IMG/VR virus record: IMGVR_UViG_3300003877_000001
Coordinates: 248,001 to 312,000 of that record
Reading direction: 5' to 3' (one strand)
Length of the DNA stretch: 64,000 nucleotides
The notes under the pieces were generated by a model. That model was given only the letters and a program-made list of their open reading frames with translations, was not told the DNA's origin and did not search any database. The position numbers were made by a program, and so were the translations under genes. Shown here in pieces: positions 3,798-58,398 of the stretch. Every line of letters starts with the position of its first letter. The stretch's first letter is position 1.

Positions 3798-4402
3798 TAT
3801 ATTTCTATTTCTAAATCTTCTAAAAAGGTTCTAAAATCAAATGAAGGATTTAAATCAGTATAATCACTATTATAATTACTTCTGGTTACTATTCCCTCAT
3901 ATTTCAATGTATTTTCATAATATACATTAAAACCTAAACAATCTAATTCAATATCAAATTCTTTAATTAAAAATTTACATAACTCAACAGTCGAATTATA
4001 TTGTTTTTCAGTATATTGTTCCCAATATGTATGACCATTCCACTTTCTTTCATACATCAATTCTTCAGGACATACATCATGAACCCAATTAAGATATTTA
4101 CTTGTTTCATAATCATAGAAAAGCATCCCCATATTTTCTAATACTATTGATATTGATTTTTTATCAATTTCTTTATTACCCATATAATCTGAATAATATT
4201 TTGGATCATAATGTTGGAATATTTTTCCTTCTCTACTTATGGTGTATGTGCACCAGCTTTTACCATTACCACCATCTTTATGTTTTAATCTATTTATGTG
4301 AAGATTATCTTTTCTAAGACTACCAGCTAATATTATTTGTGTTTTATCATATTTTGCTTTGTAGAAATTATCTATTTTATATGTATCTCTATCTATCTTC
4401 AT
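3797..4402 (-). CDS. N-acetylmuramoyl-L-alanine amidase (Amidase_2/PGRP)-like protein, Zn ligands apparently missing
   Basis: KTQIIL..., YTISREGKIFQ, SISIVLENMG, YTEKQYNSTVELCKFL and DLNPSFDF follow the amidase_2 pattern; the His positions are substituted. Confidence 0.7.
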   Translation of the reverse strand: MKIDRDTYKIDNFYKAKYDKTQIILAGSLRKDNLHINRLKHKDGGNGKSWCTYTISREGKIFQHYDPKYYSDYMGNKEIDKKSISIVLENMGMLFYDYETSKYLNWVHDVCPEELMYERKWNGHTYWEQYTEKQYNSTVELCKFLIKEFDIELDCLGFNVYYENTLKYEGIVTRSNYNSDYTDLNPSFDFRTFLEDLEIEI

Positions 4403-4598
4403 GACTCAAAATACCTTCACAACTTGCACCTTTAAATACCGTAGTACCTTGTTCATCTTGATATCCATGATATTCTTTTCCAAGATTAAAATCAATATTA
4501 TTTATTTTAATATCTTCAACTTCGTTTAGATGTTTAATAATAATTTCTTTAATTTCATCATTACTTAATTCGACAGTTATATTTCTCTCAACTTTCAT
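4389..4598 (-). CDS. Small hypothetical protein
   Basis: Likely start MKVERN at 4598, overlapping the end of the dCMP deaminase gene. Confidence 0.55.
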   Translation of the reverse strand: MKVERNITVELSNDEIKEIIIKHLNEVEDIKINNIDFNLGKEYHGYQDEQGTTVFKGASCEGILSHEDR

Positions 4599-5187
4599 TT
4601 CCAATATTTTTAATCCAATAATTACCATTTTTAATTTCTTCTTCAGATGGTCTATCACCACCACCCAATTGTTCAACTTTCGTTTTTAGAAATTCTTCAA
4701 TTTCATTTTTAGGAACATCACCAACATCTATCATATATGTTCTACTTAATGGTGTGAAAATTTCAACACCAGCTTCTTTTAATTTTTGTTGTGAAATTTT
4801 AAATTCATGACCGTATTTTTCATCTTCAAAATTTGGGTCTTTACTAACTACAATTCTTTTAATTCCTGAATTAATAATATTTCCTGCACATCTAGCACAC
4901 GGAAATAAATTAAGATACATGATTGTGTTTTTAGTTGCAACACCTATTCTTGCAGCATTGGTAATAGCATTTTCTTCAGCGTGTACAGTCCAATCATATT
5001 TTGCAGGTCTTTCATGCCTTTCATCAATATCATCGTCTACACCTGATGGAAATCCATTATAACCGAAAGATACTACACGTTTGTCATCATTAACAATAAC
5101 AGCACCAACACCTCTTGATTTATCTTTACTCCAATCAGAAATATATTCTGCTAATTCTAAAAATCTTTTATCCCAATCAACTTTCAT
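4588..5187 (-). CDS. dCMP deaminase with C-terminal extension
   Basis: WDKRFLELA, GYNGFP, HAEENAI and PCARC Zn-deaminase motifs. Confidence 0.92.
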   Translation of the reverse strand: MKVDWDKRFLELAEYISDWSKDKSRGVGAVIVNDDKRVVSFGYNGFPSGVDDDIDERHERPAKYDWTVHAEENAITNAARIGVATKNTIMYLNLFPCARCAGNIINSGIKRIVVSKDPNFEDEKYGHEFKISQQKLKEAGVEIFTPLSRTYMIDVGDVPKNEIEEFLKTKVEQLGGGDRPSEEEIKNGNYWIKNIGNES

Positions 5188-50346: not shown

Positions 50347-50373
50347 AAAAGGGGAATTATTATAAATCCCCTT
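50347..50373 (-). terminator. Intrinsic terminator overlapping the polymerase stop
   Basis: aagggga.../...tcccctt stem plus U-tract. Confidence 0.55.
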
Positions 50374-53300
50374 CATCAAAATAAATATCAGGTTCGAAAT
50401 CAGCTTCCTTTTCATTAACATAATCATCAAAAGCTAATTTCACATTTGGTACTTTTTCAAACAATTCATCCATATCATAATGTGGTGGTATGTTATTATC
50501 TTTTACAAAAGACTTAAAATATTCAATTTTTTTCATTCTCTCTTTAACAATCTTCTCCTTTTGCACATTAATATAATTAACATCTTCCACTCTAAGTTTT
50601 TGTAATTCAGCTTCCTTTACCTTTTCAGCTTCTTCCCATTGATGTTCTGTTGGTGAAAGTGGTACTTTAACATCATCATACTTTTTCAATATTTCAATGA
50701 ATTCACCATTATTATACCCAATTGTATATTTATCTCTAACCCAATGATTACCATTTTTATAAACATATTTATTTTCAATTTTTGGTTTAGATGCATTAAC
50801 TACTAAAGGAGTAATATCACCAACCTTTATAATATTTTTAATTAAAACATAATCACCACGAATCGTTTTATCATTAATAGATTTAATCCTAGACTTACCA
50901 GACTTTTCCATTGCATCACTAAGATAGTTCAATGCATGATTATATATTTCATAATTAACTAATCCATATTTTTCAACATCTTTTGTTTTAAAACCATCCC
51001 ATATTAATCTTGGATCATAACCAGTTTTATTCCAAAAATCAACTTCCCTATCTTCAAGATACATAGAGTCTTCATAATCATCATGATTAAAGTTTTTTAA
51101 GACTAATTGATCTGATTTAAATTCTCCCTTTTTAAGATCGATTTGCTCAACCTTTGCACCTGATGCATCTTCAATTTTTTTTCTAACTATTTTAACTAAA
51201 ATTTCATCTCTTATTTCAGCATCAAATCCATCAAGTAATACTTTAACACGTTTATTAAATGCTGCAAGATATTTTTCTACATTATAATCACCTGTTGTTT
51301 CAGGATTTTCTTCTAAATCTTTTTGGTTGATTAATCTAGCTTTAATAATAGTTTCACCTGTTTTAGAATCACTTTTAACATCACCATGAGACTTACGTGT
51401 ACCTGTGTTAACATAATAAACAGTAGTATCTAATTCAGGTTCAGGTGGCATATATGTTTCAACCTTCTCTATTATTGTCATTATATCATAATCACCAATT
51501 TCTCTATTATCATCATCTTTAAATTTTTCAAAATCATTTTCAAAGATTTTTCTAGCAATATTTTCACGTTCAGCAATAATAAGTTCCATATGTACTTGTT
51601 TTGCCTTTAATTTACCATTTTTATTTGTACCACGATTAAGATAATCATCTATTGAATTTTTAATTCTAGATTTAGATGCTATTTTTTTCAATGGTATTTG
51701 TTTATAAAAAATTGTTTCAGAATAATTATAATAATATTCTATAAAACCTTCACCATTACCATCTAAAATTAATTTCATGCTTTCATCAATAAAATCTTCA
51801 ATGAATTCAGGCATTGTTTTAGACTTAATTGTATTACCAGTAAATTTAATTTTTTTCTTATTAATAAAACACCCATTAAAGTTTGGATCAGGGACTTGTT
51901 TTGGTTTACCTGTTTCTTTATCTATATCGTCTGACATTAAAGCATAATTAATTCTAGATAAATTTAAACATGAGTCAAACTCACCATCATTATCTACGGA
52001 TAAATAAGAATTTTCACGACCTAACGAGGTATAATGATCTTTTAAATAATCATTGAACTTTTCTATCAATGCTGAAACACCTGTCTTATTATTATATTCC
52101 CACATTTCTTCAATTACACCCTCACTTACTCCCTCACTTACACCCTCATTAGTAGCTCTAATTGTTGTAGTATCTGGAATGCTAAAGTTAATACCATCTG
52201 TTACAGCAAGTAATGGAATTAATCCAAATTTATTAAACCAATCAATTGCTTGTCTTAAATATATTCTACCTGTTGTAGTAATTCTAGCAGCACATATATT
52301 ATCTGACCAATTAAATGCATATCCTGAACCTAATGCACCAAATAATGAATTGTTAAGAATTTTAATAGGTAACTGCTTAACAATAAATATATTTATTTGT
52401 TCTTTAGTAAATTTACCACTAAAAAATATTTGATATGATTCATTATCGATTGTTTTTAATAATTCAATTTCATTATCTGTAAGTTTATCTTCATTTCCAA
52501 GTTTCTTATATATGTTACGAGTTGTTGTCATATAAGTAAGCATCTTCTTAATAACACCAGTAATATCAAACATAGGGAATACATCATGTGTCAACTGTAT
52601 CATTGGATATAGTGATGCATAATCAATTTTAAGAAGTCTCTTAGTGTAACCTTTCTTATAACATCTTGCAAGACCACCTGAAAATCTTTCAACATCATCA
52701 GGATGTGGAATTGCTAAATCATTTTCATAACTCCATGCTGTCATGAGTAAGTTCCAAACGGCAGCATTGCCCATTGTTGCAACACGACTATATATTGTTG
52801 GAACAATTTTAGCAAGTAAGAATGATGATTGGTTGTATAAATTATCTACTTGTTCTGTTTCCCATAAATCATCCAATAAATATCTTCTTAAAATATTCTT
52901 ACCGTTTTCAAATTTAAAATCTATTGTTGTTGATGAAAACTTATCAGGATTTAATTTAATAATATTAGGTCTTAACCATTCAACAAATTCAGGGTTTGGT
53001 TTTAATAATTCATTTCTAGCTACCTTATATTCATCATCACTGATTTTATCTTTATTTTCTTGTAAAAAATATAATTCACTCGATACATTATAGAATTTAG
53101 CAGGAATTTCAATATAATCATTATTTTCACTATTTAAAATAAACATAGGATTTTTATGCCAAAATCTTCCAATATCCTTACCATCATGTATATACATTCT
53201 ATTAGGTTTGGCAATATCTTCATATTTACAAATATATTTTAATTTGTTATTTTTGATTTCACTATTAACTGCTGCTGTTTTTTTTACGGCATGTATAATA

Positions 53301-54295
53301 TCTAATATTGTAAAACCATAGGCTATTGTTTGATTATATTTTTCAGTACTATTACCAAATTTAACAGTACTACCCTTTTTTCTCCATAAATCTTCTTCAG
53401 GTATTAAGGTAGTTTGTATTCTATTTTTAGGTATATCTTCTTTTTTTCTTTTTCTAGGAAACCCATTTTTAGTATATTCTGATTCAACATCCATTCCTAA
53501 TAATCTAGCTCTACCCAATATAAAGTCATAATCAAACATTTCAGAGTTATAACCTGAAATAATTGCAGGATTAATATATGTAATTAAATTAAAAAAATCT
53601 TGTATTATTATTTTTTCTGATTCATCATCATCAGGTTTTTCAACTTCTAATACATGTTCAAATCCTTTATTATCTTTCATACCAATAGCAAAGATTCTTG
53701 AATGTTCGTATCTTAAACCAGTGGTTTCAATATCAAATGTTAATTTATGTACATCATTATATTCTTCAAATCCTTTAAATAATCTAATTCCTGTTGATAT
53801 GAAAAATTGTTCATTTAGTTTTGGAAGATAAAATAAATCTCTATATTTAGAAACACTAAAACCTCTATTATCTTTAAGTATTTTACCTCTATCATCATAA
53901 ATTTTTTGATATGGATTTAAACCAGCTTCTTCAAAAAATTTAATTAACATACTAAATGATTTAGTTGTAGATGCTTTATATGGATAACCATTTTCTAATC
54001 TTGGATGGTTACCTGTTTTCATTTTTGTAATCGTTACATCATACTTTTGTAGGATTGCCTTATATTTATCAACATTACCATCAAAGAGTTTATACCCAAC
54101 CTTTTTAAGGTCTTTAAAATAGATGAATGATGTAAATGGTATTCGAACAATTTGTTTGGTTTTATTTGGTTCATGAATTACACATGTTGCATATTCATGA
54201 TTATTGTCTGTTTCAACATTAACCAAATATTTTACATCATTATTTTTCCCTTCTAAAAATTCTTGAATTTCTTTAATAGTATTTTCAGTTGTCAT
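50360..54295 (-). CDS. Family B DNA polymerase
   Basis: ExoI FDIETTG, ExoII YNSEMFD, ExoIII YLLDD; motif A DYASLYP, motif B KILNNSLFG, motif C AVTDG. Confidence 0.92.
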   Translation of the reverse strand: MTTENTIKEIQEFLEGKNNDVKYLVNVETDNNHEYATCVIHEPNKTKQIVRIPFTSFIYFKDLKKVGYKLFDGNVDKYKAILQKYDVTITKMKTGNHPRLENGYPYKASTTKSFSMLIKFFEEAGLNPYQKIYDDRGKILKDNRGFSVSKYRDLFYLPKLNEQFFISTGIRLFKGFEEYNDVHKLTFDIETTGLRYEHSRIFAIGMKDNKGFEHVLEVEKPDDDESEKIIIQDFFNLITYINPAIISGYNSEMFDYDFILGRARLLGMDVESEYTKNGFPRKRKKEDIPKNRIQTTLIPEEDLWRKKGSTVKFGNSTEKYNQTIAYGFTILDIIHAVKKTAAVNSEIKNNKLKYICKYEDIAKPNRMYIHDGKDIGRFWHKNPMFILNSENNDYIEIPAKFYNVSSELYFLQENKDKISDDEYKVARNELLKPNPEFVEWLRPNIIKLNPDKFSSTTIDFKFENGKNILRRYLLDDLWETEQVDNLYNQSSFLLAKIVPTIYSRVATMGNAAVWNLLMTAWSYENDLAIPHPDDVERFSGGLARCYKKGYTKRLLKIDYASLYPMIQLTHDVFPMFDITGVIKKMLTYMTTTRNIYKKLGNEDKLTDNEIELLKTIDNESYQIFFSGKFTKEQINIFIVKQLPIKILNNSLFGALGSGYAFNWSDNICAARITTTGRIYLRQAIDWFNKFGLIPLLAVTDGINFSIPDTTTIRATNEGVSEGVSEGVIEEMWEYNNKTGVSALIEKFNDYLKDHYTSLGRENSYLSVDNDGEFDSCLNLSRINYALMSDDIDKETGKPKQVPDPNFNGCFINKKKIKFTGNTIKSKTMPEFIEDFIDESMKLILDGNGEGFIEYYYNYSETIFYKQIPLKKIASKSRIKNSIDDYLNRGTNKNGKLKAKQVHMELIIAERENIARKIFENDFEKFKDDDNREIGDYDIMTIIEKVETYMPPEPELDTTVYYVNTGTRKSHGDVKSDSKTGETIIKARLINQKDLEENPETTGDYNVEKYLAAFNKRVKVLLDGFDAEIRDEILVKIVRKKIEDASGAKVEQIDLKKGEFKSDQLVLKNFNHDDYEDSMYLEDREVDFWNKTGYDPRLIWDGFKTKDVEKYGLVNYEIYNHALNYLSDAMEKSGKSRIKSINDKTIRGDYVLIKNIIKVGDITPLVVNASKPKIENKYVYKNGNHWVRDKYTIGYNNGEFIEILKKYDDVKVPLSPTEHQWEEAEKVKEAELQKLRVEDVNYINVQKEKIVKERMKKIEYFKSFVKDNNIPPHYDMDELFEKVPNVKLAFDDYVNEKEADFEPDIYFDEGDL

Positions 54296-57200
54296 TCTTT
54301 GTATTTGTTTTTAAGTTTGTTGATAACATCTCTAAGTACAGATTCTGAAATATTACTTTCATAATCTTCGTTATCCAATGCTTTCATTATTTCTTTTCGT
54401 TTAGATTCTATAACATCAAAAACATACTCATCGAGAGTATCTCTAAATATGATAGGATAGATGTTAACTGTGTTTTTCTGTGAGATTCTATGAAGCCTAT
54501 CTGCAACCTGATCATATTGACCAACAGAGAATGGGAGTGTAATAATAATCATTTTTGATGATGCTGTCAAGGTTAAACCATAATTAGCTGTCTGAATTGA
54601 TGCTAAAAATATTTTAACATTACTTTCAGGGTCTTGAAATTTAGCTACTAATGCTGCTCTATCTTCTACTGTTTGATCACCAGTATGTAATGCTGAATTT
54701 TCTGGATAAAGATCATGAAGATCATATAATGATTGTTTAAACATATCAACAACAACAACTTTTTCACCTTGTTCTAATATATTATCAATGATTTCTCTAA
54801 TATAGTTAACCTTAATTGATGAAGTATATTGACGTAATCTCAACATTATAGTTAATGGATTTGATGTTGGTTTCTCATATATCTCATTAACAACATCTTC
54901 CTCAATTTGATCATATAATTTATCTTCCTTAGTATTAAGTTCTAAAATAATTTTTTGATAAATTTTATCAGGTAAATCGGTTAATACTTCTTCCTTTTTC
55001 TTTCTATATACATATGATGCAATTTTATGAAATAGTTCTTCCAATTTTTGATGTTGTACGTTTGTTGACCAACCACCAAAACCATCCATATCATAGGACA
55101 TGCCACAATAATATTCATTAAAATGTTTTTTTGTTGCAAAATCAATCGGTGATATTTGATTTAGTACCGTATATAATTCATGTGCTCTATTTGGTGCAGG
55201 AGTACCTGAAAGAAATACTTTACTAACCTCTCCATTTTTGAATACCTTTTTATTAAATATTCTTTTGAAATTTTTGAATGTATTTGCTGAAGTATTTTTT
55301 AATGCTTGACAATTACTAACTAATATACTATTAGCAAAATAATTATGATTATCCGCTATTTCTAGATCATATACCCTTTTATTTTGTTCACCACTTCTTC
55401 CAAATTTTCGTCTATTTCCTGATTCCAAAATCTCAATACTTTCCACCCAAACAATTTCAATATCTCTGTTTTCCTTTTGTCTAGAAATTTCCATTTTTTT
55501 GTTTTGTGAGATTTTCCATCTATTTCTATTGATAATTTTATTGATGTAATTCCAATATCCACTTTGTAATGTGTTGGTGGAGATTTTATATTCGTAATAC
55601 CCATTTCCTTTAATGGTTTCATTATTGGTATCACATGTTCCATTTCCATAAATGTAATGCCTGAAATTTCTCCAAATAATATTAATTGTTGTTTTGTCAA
55701 TTTTCCATTTCCACCCCTTGATAAAAACGTTCTCCCAATCATTTTTTTTCTCATTTTTTCTACTGTTATTGGGTTTGACATTGGATTGTTCAATTTCATC
55801 CTCTCCGATTGATTCTTTCTCATTTGAGGGTTCTTTTTGTAAAACTCTATCATAGATAGACTCCTTTTTTTCGAAAGTTCCTTCATATATAATTTTTCTT
55901 TTATTTCTGGTAAAGACATTCTCCATTTTGCTGAACAACTTGTTGAACAAAATTTCTTTTTTCTTTTTTTCATTACTTGAAATTCCACGCCACATTGTTG
56001 ACATATCCTTATCTCTCTCAATTGTAAATTGACTTCTTTTTTTCTTCCAGTGTATTTTGTTGAACATTTTCTTGAACAAAGTTTTTGTGTTCTTCTTTTC
56101 TGTTGAAATAGAGTGTTGCACTCTAGGCAATTTGTTTTTTTTATTAATTTTCCCTTTTCTTTCCATCTCTGCTTCATTGAACACGTTACAGTGCAACATT
56201 TCTTTTTCACATGTTCTTTTATTTGGAATTCTTTCTCGCAAAATTGGCAATTTCGTGTTATTATTTTGCTTTGTTTTCTTTTTAATAAGTTTTTCCCCAT
56301 ATTTAAAATTTTTAATAGGTTTATATTTATTTTCAGTAATTGAATAAAATTTGTGGTCTGGTGTACATTCGATTATTTCACCATTAGATAATTTTATTTT
56401 AATTACATCTTTATATCCGTTATATAAATACCTACTAATTGTTTTTGTTTCAATCTTTTTTAACGTATGATTATAGGATAAAACTTTTACATCTAATTTA
56501 TCTTCAACAATTTTCCCAATTTTCATTTTCCCTTTATCAGTATCAATTAATGTATTATATGTAAAACATTCGTCTGCAATTAATACATCTATTAAACCAA
56601 TATTTAAATCTTTAAATTTTTTATCAACTTTTTTCTTATCTCTAGAATTAAAATATTCATAATTAACAATAATATATTTAGATTCTTCCATTGTATGTTT
56701 ATTCTTAAATTTACTAGATTTAGGAACAATTATATGTGCTTTAGAATGTGTAAATTTTTCAACTTCATTAAAGAAATTAAATTTTAATGAGTTAGGTGTT
56801 ATTACAAACACCCTTTTAAAATTATTCATCTCAACATATGCAATTGCAGAAAGTGTATTGTGAGTTAAAATACAATTATCTGTAACATATAAATGATCTT
56901 CTGCATCAACCATTATACATTGTGCTTCTTTTTTACCAACATAATTAACTTCCTTTATTGCTCTATTAGGTAAATATTTTGTAGGTGATACATATCTTTC
57001 TATTTTACGTTTTAATTTGAAAGGTATTATATTGGGTGGTAATTTTATTGATAATCTATAATATGTTGGTTTTACTTCTATCTCTTCATACCATGAAGTT
57101 CTAGTTTTATACCTTGCAATACCACCTAATGATTGTACAATAAACTTTACATCATCTATTAATTGTTTTGATGCTAATGTTAAATCAATATTCATACCAT

Positions 57201-58398
57201 CAGAACTAATAGTTCCATCCGTATCCATAATTCCCCTTAAAATTTCTAATCTATCTTCAATTGAAGAGAACATATAATCTTTAGGAATAAATTTTGTGTG
57301 TGAACCACACCCCTTTAAGTTATATTCTTTTAAATTTTGATTTATGTAATTATTTTTACCATCTGCCGTTAGATAATAATCTTTTTTACTATTTCCAGAT
57401 AAAACTAACTGATGATTTTGTGGTAATTTAGAGTCTATCTCGTTAATAATTTCATTATCTATATTCGTAAAACTAACACCATATTTTGTTGTAATAGAGC
57501 CATCACCCAATAAACAACCTAAAATATATGGGTCTATTTTTAATTTTTTTTCTTTAAATTCAATTGGTTCAACAATGGGTATATAATGTTTATTATTACC
57601 ATTATCAAACTGTAACCCCTCATTCATGATTTCTCTAAGTGTTTTTGTTTGATATGAATATTTTTTTATTCCTTTATTTGTTCTATGAATTCTAGTTGTT
57701 GAATTAACATTCCAAAGATGTTCATCACACGATCTTGCTGTTGTATTGTCATTAAATTTAATTTCATATATATCTTTTTTACCTTGAGGATAAACTCCAA
57801 TAACTTTTGTTGATTTACCATTACTTCCAATCACATAATCACCAACTTTAACATCGCCCATTCTAATCCAACCATTAGGTGTAAGTAGTTTAGAATCTAA
57901 GTCTTGGCTTTTTCCTAAACCCATTTCTAGTGCTAATAAAACACTTTTAACTTCATCAATAAACATAGTACCAGCTATTTGATGTGGATATAATATTGTA
58001 CCTTCTTTAAGATTTTTATGTGTTAGTTCTCTATATTTTTCAAAATCCTTATCTAATTCATCTTTTAATCTAATCCAAAGATTTTTCTTTTGTACAAGTA
58101 ATTTTAATTCTAAGATTTTTCTCGCATCATCTTCATCAATTTTTTTGATTTGCTTAATAAATGCGTGTTTTTCTTCAACACCACCAAAATCAAATACGAT
58201 TTTATTAGATTTACGATACCTCTTCATTAGTTCATAAAGACCTCTGGTATTCATAATCCAACAATTTTCAACAGAATCCCATTTACGCCAATCTACGTTG
58301 ATTTCCTTTATTCTAGAAACAACTTCTTTATGATAATCGAAAAATACTTTATATTTTGATTGTCGTAATATTCTATGACAGGATACTTTAAAGGGCAT
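54292..58398 (-). CDS. SNF2-family helicase precursor with two inteins (598 aa after splicing)
   Basis: LYPHQ, EMGLGK|T, IADE|CQ, LSGTP, GLTLT and QVADRLHRISQ motifs. Confidence 0.93.
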   Translation of the reverse strand: MPFKVSCHRILRQSKYKVFFDYHKEVVSRIKEINVDWRKWDSVENCWIMNTRGLYELMKRYRKSNKIVFDFGGVEEKHAFIKQIKKIDEDDARKILELKLLVQKKNLWIRLKDELDKDFEKYRELTHKNLKEGTILYPHQIAGTMFIDEVKSVLLALEMGLGKSQDLDSKLLTPNGWIRMGDVKVGDYVIGSNGKSTKVIGVYPQGKKDIYEIKFNDNTTARSCDEHLWNVNSTTRIHRTNKGIKKYSYQTKTLREIMNEGLQFDNGNNKHYIPIVEPIEFKEKKLKIDPYILGCLLGDGSITTKYGVSFTNIDNEIINEIDSKLPQNHQLVLSGNSKKDYYLTADGKNNYINQNLKEYNLKGCGSHTKFIPKDYMFSSIEDRLEILRGIMDTDGTISSDGMNIDLTLASKQLIDDVKFIVQSLGGIARYKTRTSWYEEIEVKPTYYRLSIKLPPNIIPFKLKRKIERYVSPTKYLPNRAIKEVNYVGKKEAQCIMVDAEDHLYVTDNCILTHNTLSAIAYVEMNNFKRVFVITPNSLKFNFFNEVEKFTHSKAHIIVPKSSKFKNKHTMEESKYIIVNYEYFNSRDKKKVDKKFKDLNIGLIDVLIADECFTYNTLIDTDKGKMKIGKIVEDKLDVKVLSYNHTLKKIETKTISRYLYNGYKDVIKIKLSNGEIIECTPDHKFYSITENKYKPIKNFKYGEKLIKKKTKQNNNTKLPILRERIPNKRTCEKEMLHCNVFNEAEMERKGKINKKNKLPRVQHSISTEKKNTKTLFKKMFNKIHWKKKRSQFTIERDKDMSTMWRGISSNEKKKKEILFNKLFSKMENVFTRNKRKIIYEGTFEKKESIYDRVLQKEPSNEKESIGEDEIEQSNVKPNNSRKNEKKNDWENVFIKGWKWKIDKTTINIIWRNFRHYIYGNGTCDTNNETIKGNGYYEYKISTNTLQSGYWNYINKIINRNRWKISQNKKMEISRQKENRDIEIVWVESIEILESGNRRKFGRSGEQNKRVYDLEIADNHNYFANSILVSNCQALKNTSANTFKNFKRIFNKKVFKNGEVSKVFLSGTPAPNRAHELYTVLNQISPIDFATKKHFNEYYCGMSYDMDGFGGWSTNVQHQKLEELFHKIASYVYRKKKEEVLTDLPDKIYQKIILELNTKEDKLYDQIEEDVVNEIYEKPTSNPLTIMLRLRQYTSSIKVNYIREIIDNILEQGEKVVVVDMFKQSLYDLHDLYPENSALHTGDQTVEDRAALVAKFQDPESNVKIFLASIQTANYGLTLTASSKMIIITLPFSVGQYDQVADRLHRISQKNTVNIYPIIFRDTLDEYVFDVIESKRKEIMKALDNEDYESNISESVLRDVINKLKNKYKE
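55312..56568 (-). mobile_element. Intein 2 (419 aa) in helicase Walker B, carrying an out-of-frame nested endonuclease gene
   Basis: CFTYNTLI start, CTPDHKF block B, VYDLEIADNHNYFANSILVSN end, Cys+1. Confidence 0.92.
55362..56300 (-). CDS. Zinc-finger plus DUF559/Vsr-like endonuclease, nested in the +1 frame of intein 2
   Basis: Three CxxC...CxxxC repeats; YKVDIG...IEIDGKSH...DKRKTEILKLFGWKVLRFWN. Confidence 0.88.
   Translation of the reverse strand: MGKNLLKRKQSKIITRNCQFCEKEFQIKEHVKKKCCTVTCSMKQRWKEKGKLIKKTNCLECNTLFQQKRRTQKLCSRKCSTKYTGRKKEVNLQLREIRICQQCGVEFQVMKKRKKKFCSTSCSAKWRMSLPEIKEKLYMKELSKKRSLSMIEFYKKNPQMRKNQSERMKLNNPMSNPITVEKMRKKMIGRTFLSRGGNGKLTKQQLILFGEISGITFMEMEHVIPIMKPLKEMGITNIKSPPTHYKVDIGITSIKLSIEIDGKSHKTKKWKFLDKRKTEILKLFGWKVLRFWNQEIDENLEEVVNKIKGYMI
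56857..57909 (-). mobile_element. Intein 1 (351 aa) with LAGLIDADG endonuclease in helicase Walker A
   Basis: SQDLDSKLLTPNGW start, CDEHLW, LGCLLGDG, LRGIMDTDG, ILTHN end, Thr+1. Confidence 0.93.

What the first reader, a model, noticed from the sequence alone, without database searches (positions are those of the whole stretch)
55312..56568. Intein whose homing endonuclease is a separate gene overprinted in another reading frame
Seen: intein 2 has normal splicing blocks (C1, TPDH, VYDL...SN/C+1), but its roughly 300-aa middle has no recognisable domain. The same DNA in the +1 frame (55362-56300, own ATG and TAG) encodes a coherent 312-aa protein with three Cys4 zinc fingers and a DUF559/Vsr-like nuclease. 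Both frames stay stop-free over 939 nt in very AT-rich DNA. Functional motifs overlap: the nuclease ATG lies within the intein codons for KYGEKL, and nuclease GWKVLRF...GYMI* shares bases with intein VWVESIEI...RVYDL. Established: canonical inteins carry the nuclease in frame, as intein 1 in this gene does. Inference: this is a distinct mobile-element design in which the nuclease is translated independently or by frameshift, and the intein frame is kept open as a spacer removed by splicing. I do not know a description of it, but cannot check the literature.
Basis: partly seen in the sequence, partly recalled or inferred. Interest (0 to 1): 0.92.

Follow-up and report, generated by a model that had tools for sequence, protein, structure and literature searches.

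The report
Intein with nuclease gene overprinted out-of-frame
The second intein of this phage helicase gene carries its homing nuclease as a separate gene written in the +1 reading frame of the same DNA. The layout is real and is shared by more than 70 other phage sequences, but out-of-frame intein nucleases of other kinds have already been described.

Summary
Intein 2 (55312-56568, minus strand) has intact splicing ends and a middle with no recognisable domain. The same DNA in the +1 frame (55362-56300) encodes a 312-aa protein with three zinc fingers and a DUF559/Vsr-like nuclease.

It is not an assembly error. The same +1 layout, at the same Walker-B "DE|C" site, occurs in about 72 of 83 related loci. 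These include isolated Vibrio phages (CP-T1, K391) and 9 of 15 contigs from bacterial and archaeal genome bins. Hosts are SNF2, DEAD and RecQ helicases, clamp loaders and terminases.

- **Selection:** the nuclease frame is under purifying selection (omega 0.12-0.34). The intein frame over the same bases is not (0.85-1.97), yet it never has a stop (0 observed, about 13 expected per locus).
- **Structure:** AlphaFold gives pLDDT 90 for the nuclease frame, with best fold match I-Bth0305I. The intein-frame middle scores 42-55.
- **Mobility:** close helicase orthologues mostly lack the intein, and inteins are more alike than their exteins.

Out-of-frame intein nucleases were reported in 1998 and in 2025-26 preprints, though I found no report of this sense-strand +1 Vsr-like form.

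The parts
54292..58398 (-). SNF2-family helicase gene, 1368 codons plus stop, interrupted by two inteins. The spliced product is about 598 aa.
   Evidence: ORF list; Pfam SNF2-rel_dom and Helicase_C; intein-less orthologues of 598-610 aa.
56857..57909 (-). Intein 1 (helicase aa 164-514) at the Walker-A GLGK|T site, with a canonical in-frame LAGLIDADG nuclease.
   Evidence: Pfam LAGLIDADG_3 and Hom_end_hint; boundaries taken from gaps against intein-less orthologues L092/L095. Boundaries are approximate to about one residue.
55312..56568 (-). Intein 2 (helicase aa 611-1029, 419 aa) inserted at motif II, DE|CQ. It has Cys1, block B T..H, block F/G and a terminal Asn. The penultimate residue is Ser.
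   Evidence: Pfam Intein_splicing split over the two ends; junctions aligned in 58-60 homologues with C1 and N419 invariant.
56269..56568 (-). N-terminal splicing (HINT) part of intein 2, intein aa 1-100.
   Evidence: AlphaFold pLDDT 93-98 in these blocks, all beta strands.
55462..56268 (-). Intein-frame spacer, intein aa 101-369. It is hydrophilic (rich in K, N, E), predicted disordered, and kept free of stops but not conserved as protein.
   Evidence: pLDDT 42-55; apparent omega 0.85-1.97 in this frame; composition.
55312..55461 (-). C-terminal splicing part of intein 2, intein aa 370-419. It holds a beta strand and blocks F/G ending in Asn, followed by Cys+1.
   Evidence: DSSP strands 370-381, 398-404, 409-412 and 415-418. 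pLDDT is 96-97 for residues 371-380 and 401-419, and 57-69 for residues 381-400. C-junction alignment.
55362..56300 (-). Nested nuclease gene in the +1 frame: ATG at 56298-56300, TAG at 55362-55364, 312 aa.
   Evidence: ORF list; DUF559 E=1.3e-14; mean pLDDT 90.1; omega 0.12-0.34 in homologue pairs.
55914..56264 (-). Three CxxC-X(12-14)-CxxxC zinc fingers (nuclease aa about 13-129), the presumed DNA-recognition module.
   Evidence: Three repeated beta-beta-alpha units in the model. C100, C103 and C118 are invariant and C122 nearly invariant. Matches the zinc-finger part of phrog_1271 and an FCS-type finger.
55365..55655 (-). Vsr-like/EDxHD catalytic domain (nuclease aa about 216-312). D248, D261, H265, D274, R290 and N293 are invariant and E259 nearly invariant; all are present in the window.
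   Evidence: Alignment of 59 homologues; Foldseek top hit 3r3p I-Bth0305I with prob 1.00 and TM 0.68, then 3hrl and 1vsr; phmmer hit to 3hrl, E=7e-5.
56569..56574 (-). The D-E codons of helicase motif II (Walker B) immediately before the intein. This is the N-side of the insertion and presumed homing site.
   Evidence: DE|C junction in the window and in nearly all related loci; intein-less orthologues read DE|SQKLKN or DE|CQKLKN.

Best explanation
Intein 2 is a composite mobile element: a class-1 intein plus a homing-endonuclease gene overprinted on the same strand in the +1 frame.

Ribosomes translating the helicase read straight through. They produce the N-terminal HINT part, about 270 residues of disordered hydrophilic spacer (the nuclease gene read out of frame), and the C-terminal HINT part. 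Protein splicing then removes all of it and rejoins DE|CQ, restoring helicase motif II.

Separately, ribosomes initiate at the internal ATG (56300). They make a 312-aa protein with three zinc fingers and a Vsr-like/EDxHD nuclease domain. This protein is expected to cut intein-less alleles of the helicase near the DE|(C/S)Q site, so that repair copies the whole element in (homing).

The two frames coexist cheaply. With the nuclease at +1, an intein-frame stop can arise only where a nuclease codon ends in T and the next begins AA, AG or GA. Such a stop can always be removed by a synonymous change.

Shown here: the architecture, the selection pattern, the predicted folds and the sporadic distribution. 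Inferred: splicing, independent initiation, cleavage and homing.
For: **Architecture is conserved, not accidental.** In about 72 of 83 related loci the nuclease ORF lies wholly inside a long ORF in frame nuc+2, and never in nuc+1. These loci have DE|CF... and ...LV[HS]N|C junctions. They include the isolate genomes of Vibrio phages CP-T1, K391 and 159E43-1b. Another 9 of 15 contigs from genome bins show the same layout.

**The nuclease frame is the selected one.** Substitutions concentrate at its third codon position. NG86 omega is 0.12-0.34 in the nuclease frame and 0.85-1.97 in the intein frame over the same bases. Extein and N-intein controls give 0.05-0.42.

**The intein frame is still kept open.** There are 0 stops in 63 unique loci against 13.3 expected per locus. 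T at nuclease codon position 3 before AA/AG/GA occurs 0 times in 5285, against 30% elsewhere.

**Why always +1.** The other offset would force 1-11 unavoidable stops per nuclease (Met followed by I, M, T, N or K). The observed offset forces none.

**Folds.** The nuclease frame has mean pLDDT 90.1, with top fold match the I-Bth0305I homing endonuclease. In the intein frame, pLDDT is 93-98 over residues 1-100, 42-55 over most of the middle, and 96-97 in the C-terminal strands.

**Independent initiation.** The start lies within 5 codons of a preceding nuclease-frame stop in 43 of 63 loci, and is adjacent in 9. SD-like motifs occur upstream in 43% against 19% at control positions. Genes in the window generally lack SD sequences (33 of 36), so its A/T-rich leader is typical for this genome. 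The leader RNA is unstructured.

**Mobility.** About 20 of 25 close SNF2 orthologues (50-66% identical C-extein) lack the intein and read DE|SQ or DE|CQ. In 9 of 9 pairs the intein is more similar in DNA than its exteins, for example 87.7% against 52.8% and 73.1%. N-intein dS is 0.18-0.19 against extein dS 1.1-1.9.
Against: There are no expression, splicing or cleavage data for any member.

The window's nested ATG has no SD, and the nuclease frame is open for 24 codons upstream. A +1 frameshift fusion therefore cannot be excluded for this particular copy.

The penultimate intein residue is Ser, not the usual His. This is conserved across the SNF2 clade.

Omega estimates in overlapping frames are mutually confounded.

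Related loci were collected with peptide patterns derived from overprinted members. The share of the overprinted arrangement is therefore biased upward.

The promoter scan shows no enrichment near the nested start.
Confidence: 0.8

Rival explanations
1. Assembly artefact. Two compensating indels in homopolymer-rich DNA displace an ordinary in-frame nuclease domain, so the true intein is canonical.
For: The region is rich in A/T runs. A sister-sample contig of the same phage carries a 52-nt deletion nearby, which shows that assemblies or populations of this phage vary here.
Against: If the nuclease were really in frame, the apparent intein frame would be an arbitrary frame and should carry about 13 stops. 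It has none.

The same +1 offset recurs in more than 70 independent assemblies with GC from 26% to 68%, including finished isolate genomes.

Stops in the nuclease frame immediately precede its start codon in many loci.
Confidence: 0.01
2. The nuclease is made by programmed +1 ribosomal frameshifting from the helicase/intein frame. It would then be a fusion of N-extein, N-intein and nuclease, not a product of its own start codon.
For: In the window the +1 frame is open for 24 codons upstream of the ATG, and there is no SD.
Against: In 43 of 63 relatives a nuclease-frame stop lies 0-5 codons before the start codon, and in 9 it is adjacent. That leaves no room for a conserved shift site. SD-like motifs are enriched at the start. 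No RNA structure was found around the site.
Confidence: 0.07
3. The nested ORF is a decaying relic of a nuclease gene that once invaded the intein. Only the helicase/intein frame matters now, and the element is inherited vertically.
For: The homing cycle predicts nuclease decay after fixation. Two relatives (L032, L043) do have a broken nuclease frame while the host frame is intact.
Against: For the window and most relatives, omega is 0.12-0.34 and the catalytic and zinc-binding residues are invariant or nearly so, and all are present in the window. pLDDT is 90. Inteins are more similar than their exteins, and orthologues often lack the intein.
Confidence: 0.07
4. The nested nuclease is functional but is not a homing enzyme. 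It might degrade host DNA or act in inter-phage competition, with the intein only as its carrier.
For: DUF559/Vsr-like nucleases also occur outside mobile elements. Free-standing relatives exist (L067, L080, L167).
Against: The nuclease co-occurs strictly with one intein lineage at one type of site (the Walker B DE|C) in five NTPase families. The best structural match is a characterised homing endonuclease. The intein as a whole shows transfer signatures.
Confidence: 0.05

Closest known systems
Non-canonical actinobacteriophage inteins with out-of-frame or antisense homing endonucleases (Gosselin, Arsenault and Gogarten, bioRxiv 10.1101/2025.01.02.630785). Also the cyanobacterial dnaX intein (Gorbalenya 1998; Phillips et al., bioRxiv 10.64898/2026.09.14.751524).
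   Same: A contiguous, presumably splicing intein whose nuclease is read from another frame of the same DNA. The intein frame is kept open, and purifying selection acts on the nuclease frame but not on the overlapped intein frame. The proposed origin is invasion of a mini-intein by a free-standing nuclease gene.
   Different: The reported cases are antisense LAGLIDADG, antisense VSR-like, same-strand frame-3 EndoVII-like, and a +2 ORF LAGLIDADG in dnaX. Here the nuclease is a sense-strand +1 VSR-like/EDxHD enzyme with zinc fingers. It sits at the Walker-B site of helicases, clamp loaders and terminases, and is found outside actinophages (Vibrio phages, AT-rich jumbo phage contigs, diverse genome bins). 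The 2025 preprint states that VSR-like nucleases were otherwise known only with split inteins.
Fractured genes: split inteins with a free-standing Vsr-like homing endonuclease gene between the halves (Dassa et al. 2009, PMC2677866).
   Same: The same nuclease family, the same association with phage replication genes and inteins, and nuclease 3' ends that overlap the downstream intein part. Two relatives found here (L066, L050) have exactly this split layout.
   Different: In fractured genes the host gene is broken into two ORFs and overlaps are 6-69 bp. Here the host frame runs uninterrupted through the whole 939-nt nuclease gene, so the intein is contiguous and cis-splicing.
I-Bth0305I, the EDxHD homing endonuclease of a recA group I intron in Bacillus phage 0305phi8-36 (Taylor et al. 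2011, PMC3239194; PDB 3r3p).
   Same: It is the best structural match to the catalytic domain (prob 1.00, TM 0.68 on the target). It shares the acidic/His catalytic constellation and a modular layout with an N-terminal DNA-binding part.
   Different: Only 18-19% identity over about 110 columns. It is intron-encoded, not intein-nested. The three zinc fingers and the conserved NPM/GGNG linker motifs seen here are not part of the solved domain.
ShiLan 'hidden' HNH endonuclease in a mycobacteriophage methylase gene (Arsenault et al. 2025, PMC11855218).
   Same: An out-of-frame nuclease gene inside a host ORF that stays open in frame. The same question arises of how the nested gene is translated.
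   Different: That insertion has no splicing domains and stays in the host protein as a loop, and its nuclease is HNH. Here intact intein ends remove the spacer.

Membership tests
Class-1 intein (HINT splicing domain) | Nucleophilic Cys/Ser at position 1 and block B T-x-x-H. | tested here: met
   C1 is invariant, H72 is nearly invariant, and T69 reaches 90% in one of the two alignments of 58-60 homologues. Pfam Intein_splicing E=8e-11.
Class-1 intein (HINT splicing domain) | C-terminal Asn followed by Cys/Ser/Thr at +1, with blocks F/G. | tested here: met
   The junction reads ...LVSN|C. N419 is invariant, and the block F/G consensus is shared across loci.
Class-1 intein (HINT splicing domain) | Penultimate His (usual, but not universal). 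| tested here: not met
   The residue is Ser in the window and throughout the SNF2-hosted clade, and His in most other clades. Inteins without this His are known (my own knowledge), so this is a caveat and not an exclusion.
Class-1 intein (HINT splicing domain) | Protein splicing activity. | not testable with these tools
   Inferred only. The element sits in helicase, clamp-loader and terminase genes of phages, including cultured isolates.
EDxHD / Vsr-like homing endonucleases | Vsr-like (PD-(D/E)xK-derived) fold of the catalytic domain. | tested here: met
   Foldseek hits 3r3p, 3hrl and 1vsr rank 1-4, using a model with pLDDT 90. Pfam DUF559 E=1.3e-14.
EDxHD / Vsr-like homing endonucleases | Conserved acidic/His catalytic residues. 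| tested here: met
   D248, D261, H265 and D274 are invariant and E259 nearly invariant in 59 sequences. All are present in the window.
EDxHD / Vsr-like homing endonucleases | Site-specific cleavage of the element-free allele. | not testable with these tools
   Intein-less target alleles exist (DE|SQKLKN and DE|CQKLKN). There is no biochemical test.
[quoted passage not shown] | The nuclease ORF lies inside a contiguous intein in another frame, with the intein frame uninterrupted. | tested here: met
   The nuclease is at +1, with 0 stops in the intein frame over 939 nt.
[quoted passage not shown] | Purifying selection on the nuclease frame and relaxed selection on the overlapped intein frame. 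| tested here: met
   Omega 0.12-0.34 against 0.85-1.97 in 10 pairs; third-position excess.
Fractured genes (split intein plus free-standing nuclease gene) | The host gene is broken into two ORFs flanking the nuclease gene. | tested here: not met
   The host ORF is continuous in the window. It is met only in relatives L066 and L050.

The most novel reading that the evidence does not exclude
The sense-strand +1 overprinted form may be the evolutionary hub of Vsr-like/EDxHD intein nucleases. On this reading it is a stable, long-lived arrangement from which the others arise.

- **Fractured genes and split inteins:** a single C-to-T change that is synonymous for the nuclease would create a stop in the intein frame.
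- **In-frame EDxHD inteins:** small indels would bring the nuclease into the intein frame.
- **Free-standing copies:** these would arise by escape from the intein.

This would make it the missing intermediate in the Dassa 2009 gene-breaking model. In the nuclease tree the split, free-standing and in-frame relatives are scattered among overprinted ones. L050 looks like a just-broken copy.
Probability: 0.4. Interest if true: 0.7.

Novelty: new variant of a known kind. Interest (0 to 1): 0.62.

Why it matters
Long, fully overlapping same-strand genes are rare in DNA phages. Here a 0.6-1 kb overlap has been maintained across sequences that share only 26-60% nuclease identity. The rule that makes it possible is simple and can be checked in the sequence: no T-ending nuclease codon comes before AA, AG or GA.

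The finding extends the recently described class of inteins with out-of-frame nucleases in three ways. It adds a new nuclease family and frame combination, many new host genes, and phages well outside the actinophages.

It also ties that class to the origin of natural split inteins, which are widely used as protein-ligation tools.

In practice, standard annotation misses the nested gene. It is not annotated in the Vibrio phage records examined, and these inteins look as if they have no nuclease domain. Several carriers are cultured phages, so translation of both frames, splicing and homing can be tested directly.

Tried and rejected
- **blastn (distant) against phage records.** The 5-kb region gave only three short, irrelevant matches, so DNA-level relatives are absent from that collection.
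- **PHROGs.** It only labelled the zinc-finger part as "HNH endonuclease" families, and found nothing for the intein middle.
- **Promoter and terminator scan, 55200-56800.** 9 promoter-like sites against 10.0 expected, and no terminators. There is no evidence for a dedicated promoter.
- **RNA fold around the nested start.** -5 kcal/mol, z=0.8. No hairpin of the kind Dassa et al. reported upstream of free-standing nuclease genes, and no frameshift stimulator.
- **Single-sequence search with the C-extein.** It found only the window, its sister contig and one relative. An alignment query was needed.
- **First two structure jobs.** I rebuilt the alignments without them.
- **Chance or base composition as the cause of the double open frame.** Rejected on the third-frame control (227 stops) and the synonymous permutations.
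- **Assembly error.** Rejected on comparative grounds.
- **Not run.** The 5.8-billion-protein homologue search, the representative-protein search and the metagenome scan. The 95 nuclease loci already answered the question.
Full report
**1. What is in the window**

The minus strand carries a 1368-codon ORF (54292..58398) with SNF2-related and Helicase_C domains and two Hint/intein matches.

- **Intein 1.** It covers helicase aa 164-514 (window 56857-57909) and sits at the Walker-A GLGK|T site. It contains an in-frame LAGLIDADG domain.
- **Intein 2.** It covers aa 611-1029 (window 55312-56568) and interrupts motif II at DE|CQ. Pfam's Intein_splicing model matches only its two ends. Removing both inteins leaves 598 aa, the size of intein-less orthologues.
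- **Nested ORF.** Inside intein 2, starting at codon position 2 of the helicase frame, lies ORF 55362..56300 (ATG...TAG, 312 aa). It has three CxxC...CxxxC fingers and a DUF559 match at E=1.3e-14.

**2. Is the double open frame more than chance?**

Across the whole helicase gene the +1 frame has 84 stops, all of them outside one open run of 336 codons, which is exactly this region. The +2 frame has 227 stops and never exceeds 34 open codons.

I kept the nuclease protein fixed and permuted its own synonymous codons. This gave a mean of 13.2 stops in the intein frame, and none of 300 permutations was stop-free. The AT-rich, A-skewed composition therefore does not explain the open frame.

**3. 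It is a family, not a singleton**

A tblastn search with the nested protein against GenBank phages hit 40 records, mostly Vibrio phages, all under CDSs annotated as helicase.

In CP-T1, K391 and 159E43-1b the match is again in the +1 frame of a helicase ORF, inside an intein at DE|CH. The nested ORF is not annotated in any of these records.

A pattern search of IMG/VR returned 80 loci. L004 is the window itself, from a 325,854-bp contig.

- In about 72 of all 83 loci the nuclease ORF lies entirely within a long ORF in frame nuc+2, so the nuclease is at +1. It is never within an ORF in frame nuc+1.
- The junctions are uniform...DE|CF... and ...LV[HS]N|C. Inteins are 278-439 aa. The nuclease start falls at about intein residue 36-105, most often 70-100, and its stop lies in or next to blocks F/G.
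- Host genes are SNF2, DEAD/ResIII and RecQ helicases, clamp-loader subunits and large terminases. The insertion is always at the Walker-B acidic motif.
- Nine of 15 hits in the species-representative genome collection show the same layout. They come from bins labelled Bacteroidota, Thermococci, Alphaproteobacteria, Actinomycetota, Akkermansia, Lachnospiraceae and others.
- GC content of the carriers ranges from 26% to 68%.

This rules out an assembly artefact.

**4. Which frame is under selection?**

Between homologues, differences pile up at the nuclease's third codon position, for example 13/20/47 and 22/27/67. That position is the first codon position of the intein frame.

Nei-Gojobori estimates on ten pairs gave the following.

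| Region and frame | Omega |
|---|---|
| Nuclease frame | 0.12-0.34 |
| Intein frame, same bases | 0.85-1.97 |
| Exteins and non-overlapped N-intein (controls) | 0.05-0.42 |

The spacer's amino-acid sequence is therefore unconstrained, yet its frame is never interrupted. Among 5285 nuclease codons followed by AA, AG or GA, none ends in T, against 30% T elsewhere. Across 63 unique loci the observed stop count is zero, where 13.3 per locus are expected.

The genetic code explains why the offset is always +1. In this offset every potential stop can be removed by a synonymous NNT-to-NNC change. In the other offset, Met followed by I, M, T, N or K forces a TGA, and each nuclease contains 1-11 such pairs, including pairs in its conserved motifs.

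**5. Structure**

With a 59-sequence alignment, AlphaFold models the nested protein at mean pLDDT 90.1. The model has three beta-beta-alpha finger modules, a helical linker and an alpha/beta catalytic domain.

Foldseek against the PDB ranks the I-Bth0305I homing-endonuclease catalytic domain first (3r3p, prob 1.00, target TM 0.68). Next come a DUF559 protein (3hrl) and E. coli Vsr.

D248, D261, H265, D274, R290 and N293 are invariant and E259 nearly invariant. The finger cysteines C100, C103 and C118 are invariant and C122 nearly invariant. All are present in the window.

The same DNA read in the intein frame gives a very different picture.

| Intein residues | pLDDT (means of 10-residue blocks) |
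|---|---|
| 1-100 | 93-98 |
| 101-360 | 42-55 |
| 361-370 | 60 |
| 371-380 | 96 |
| 381-400 | 57-69 |
| 401-419 | 97 |

About a dozen codons at the 3' end of the overlap encode structured elements in both frames.

**6. Expression (inferred)**

In 43 of 63 unique relatives a nuclease-frame stop lies 0-5 codons upstream of the first start codon, and in 9 it is directly adjacent. This leaves no conserved room for a frameshift fusion.

SD-like motifs occur upstream in 43% of loci against 19% at control positions. Strong matches occur in 21% against 6%.

The window's own genes almost all lack SD sequences (33 of 36). They have A/T-rich leaders like the one before the nested ATG, and that leader is unstructured.

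Independent internal initiation is the best reading. Frameshifting cannot be formally excluded for this copy, because 24 codons are open upstream of the ATG.

**7. Mobility**

Among helicase orthologues with 50-66% identical C-exteins, about 20 of 25 have no intein at this site and read DE|SQKLKN or DE|CQKLKN. Intein 1 is also sporadic.

In nine of nine pairs the intein DNA is more similar than the flanking extein DNA, for example 87.7% against 52.8% and 73.1%. Synonymous divergence of the non-overlapped N-intein is 0.18-0.19, against 1.1-1.9 in the exteins.

This pattern is what recent horizontal spread by homing would produce. Cleavage itself is untested.

**8. Other arrangements of the same nuclease**

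- **L066** is a classic fractured gene. The N-extein and N-intein ORF ends in a stop, followed by the nuclease ORF.
- **L050** is a clamp-loader gene whose intein frame has a stop inside the overlap and restarts downstream. The nuclease ORF spans both pieces.
- **L067/L070, L080 and L167** are free-standing copies.
- **L173 and L174** appear to carry a homologous nuclease in frame: both have a long open nuclease frame and no enclosing ORF. Only L174 was read, and there the nuclease sits inside an intein of a 671-aa ORF next to a putative head protein.

In a quick maximum-likelihood tree these variants are scattered among overprinted members, and well-supported branches force at least 3 changes of state. 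Sampling was seeded from overprinted members, so the direction of change is suggestive only.

**9. Comparison with the literature**

The design is not new in principle. Gorbalenya (1998), as cited in the papers I read, proposed nucleases in alternative frames of the dnaX intein. This was re-examined with selection analysis in bioRxiv 10.64898/2026.09.14.751524.

Gosselin et al. (bioRxiv 10.1101/2025.01.02.630785) report actinophage inteins with antisense LAGLIDADG, antisense VSR-like, and same-strand frame-3 EndoVII-like nucleases. They state that VSR-like nucleases were otherwise known only with split inteins.

Dassa et al. 2009 (PMC2677866) described those split "fractured genes", with overlaps of 6-69 bp. 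A related out-of-frame HNH inside a methylase gene has no splicing domain.

Five full-text searches found no description of a sense-strand +1 VSR-like/EDxHD nuclease in a contiguous intein, of the Vibrio phage cases, or of the codon rule. The library lacks most subscription journals, so absence there is not proof.

**10. Verdict**

It is wrong about the design being undescribed.

This is a new variant of a known kind, and a member of a large, previously unannotated family. Interest is moderate to high, mainly for three reasons: the scale and age of the overlap, the simple rule that sustains it, and the link to the origin of split inteins.

Noticed in passing
L005 4830-4950 and L084 (IMGVR_UViG_3300003876_000014), equivalent to window about 55375-55426: A sister-sample contig of the same phage is identical across this region except for a 52-nt deletion. 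The deletion removes the last ~17 codons of the nuclease and shifts the helicase frame into the nuclease's TAG, truncating the helicase. It is either a defective subpopulation or an assembly error.
   Followed up: partly
L050 3307-5448: A clamp-loader gene with this intein is split into two ORFs by a stop in the intein frame inside the overlap, and the nuclease ORF (3938-4777) spans both. It looks like a freshly fractured gene, or a sequencing error.
   Followed up: partly
L174 1470-3485 (also L173): A homologous nuclease (zinc finger plus Vsr-like domain, about 30% identity) is encoded in frame inside an intein in L174. The host is a 671-aa ORF next to a putative head protein, in a contig binned as Bacteroidota. 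L173 shows the same signature of a long open nuclease frame but was not read. Canonical in-frame versions of this nuclease family therefore also exist.
   Followed up: partly
L080 3953-6084: A free-standing relative of the nuclease sits directly upstream of an intein-less helicase gene. That helicase gene is itself split into two overlapping ORFs exactly at the DE|HH motif where the intein would insert. The cause is unknown: it could be a frameshift, a sequencing error or a footprint.
   Followed up: no
window 56857-57909: Intein 1 (in-frame LAGLIDADG, at Walker A GLGK|T) is also sporadic. Some orthologues carry it (for example L087 and L090) and others lack it (L092, L095). It appears to begin with Ser and not Cys.
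   Followed up: partly
window, whole (36 ORFs of at least 200 aa): 33 of 36 long ORFs have no Shine-Dalgarno-like motif and instead have A/T-rich leaders. GC is about 20-31% around this gene. The source contig is 325,854 bp, which suggests a jumbo phage of a host with SD-independent initiation.
   Followed up: partly
window 50360-54295 (-): The 1311-aa ORF directly downstream of the helicase is unannotated here; from its sequence I read it as a family-B DNA polymerase, which no search confirmed. It contains a short tandem peptide repeat (SEGV x3). The stop of the helicase ORF overlaps the start of this ORF (54292-54295).
   Followed up: no
L001 (NC_019457 CP-T1), L002 (K391), L003 (159E43-1b): In these deposited Vibrio phage genomes the nested nuclease ORFs (249, 261 and 209 aa) are not annotated. 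The helicase CDS is annotated as one protein, with no mention of an intein.
   Followed up: yes
L032 and L043: In two relatives the nuclease frame is interrupted near its start while the host/intein frame stays open. These are candidates for decaying nucleases on the way to mini-inteins.
   Followed up: no
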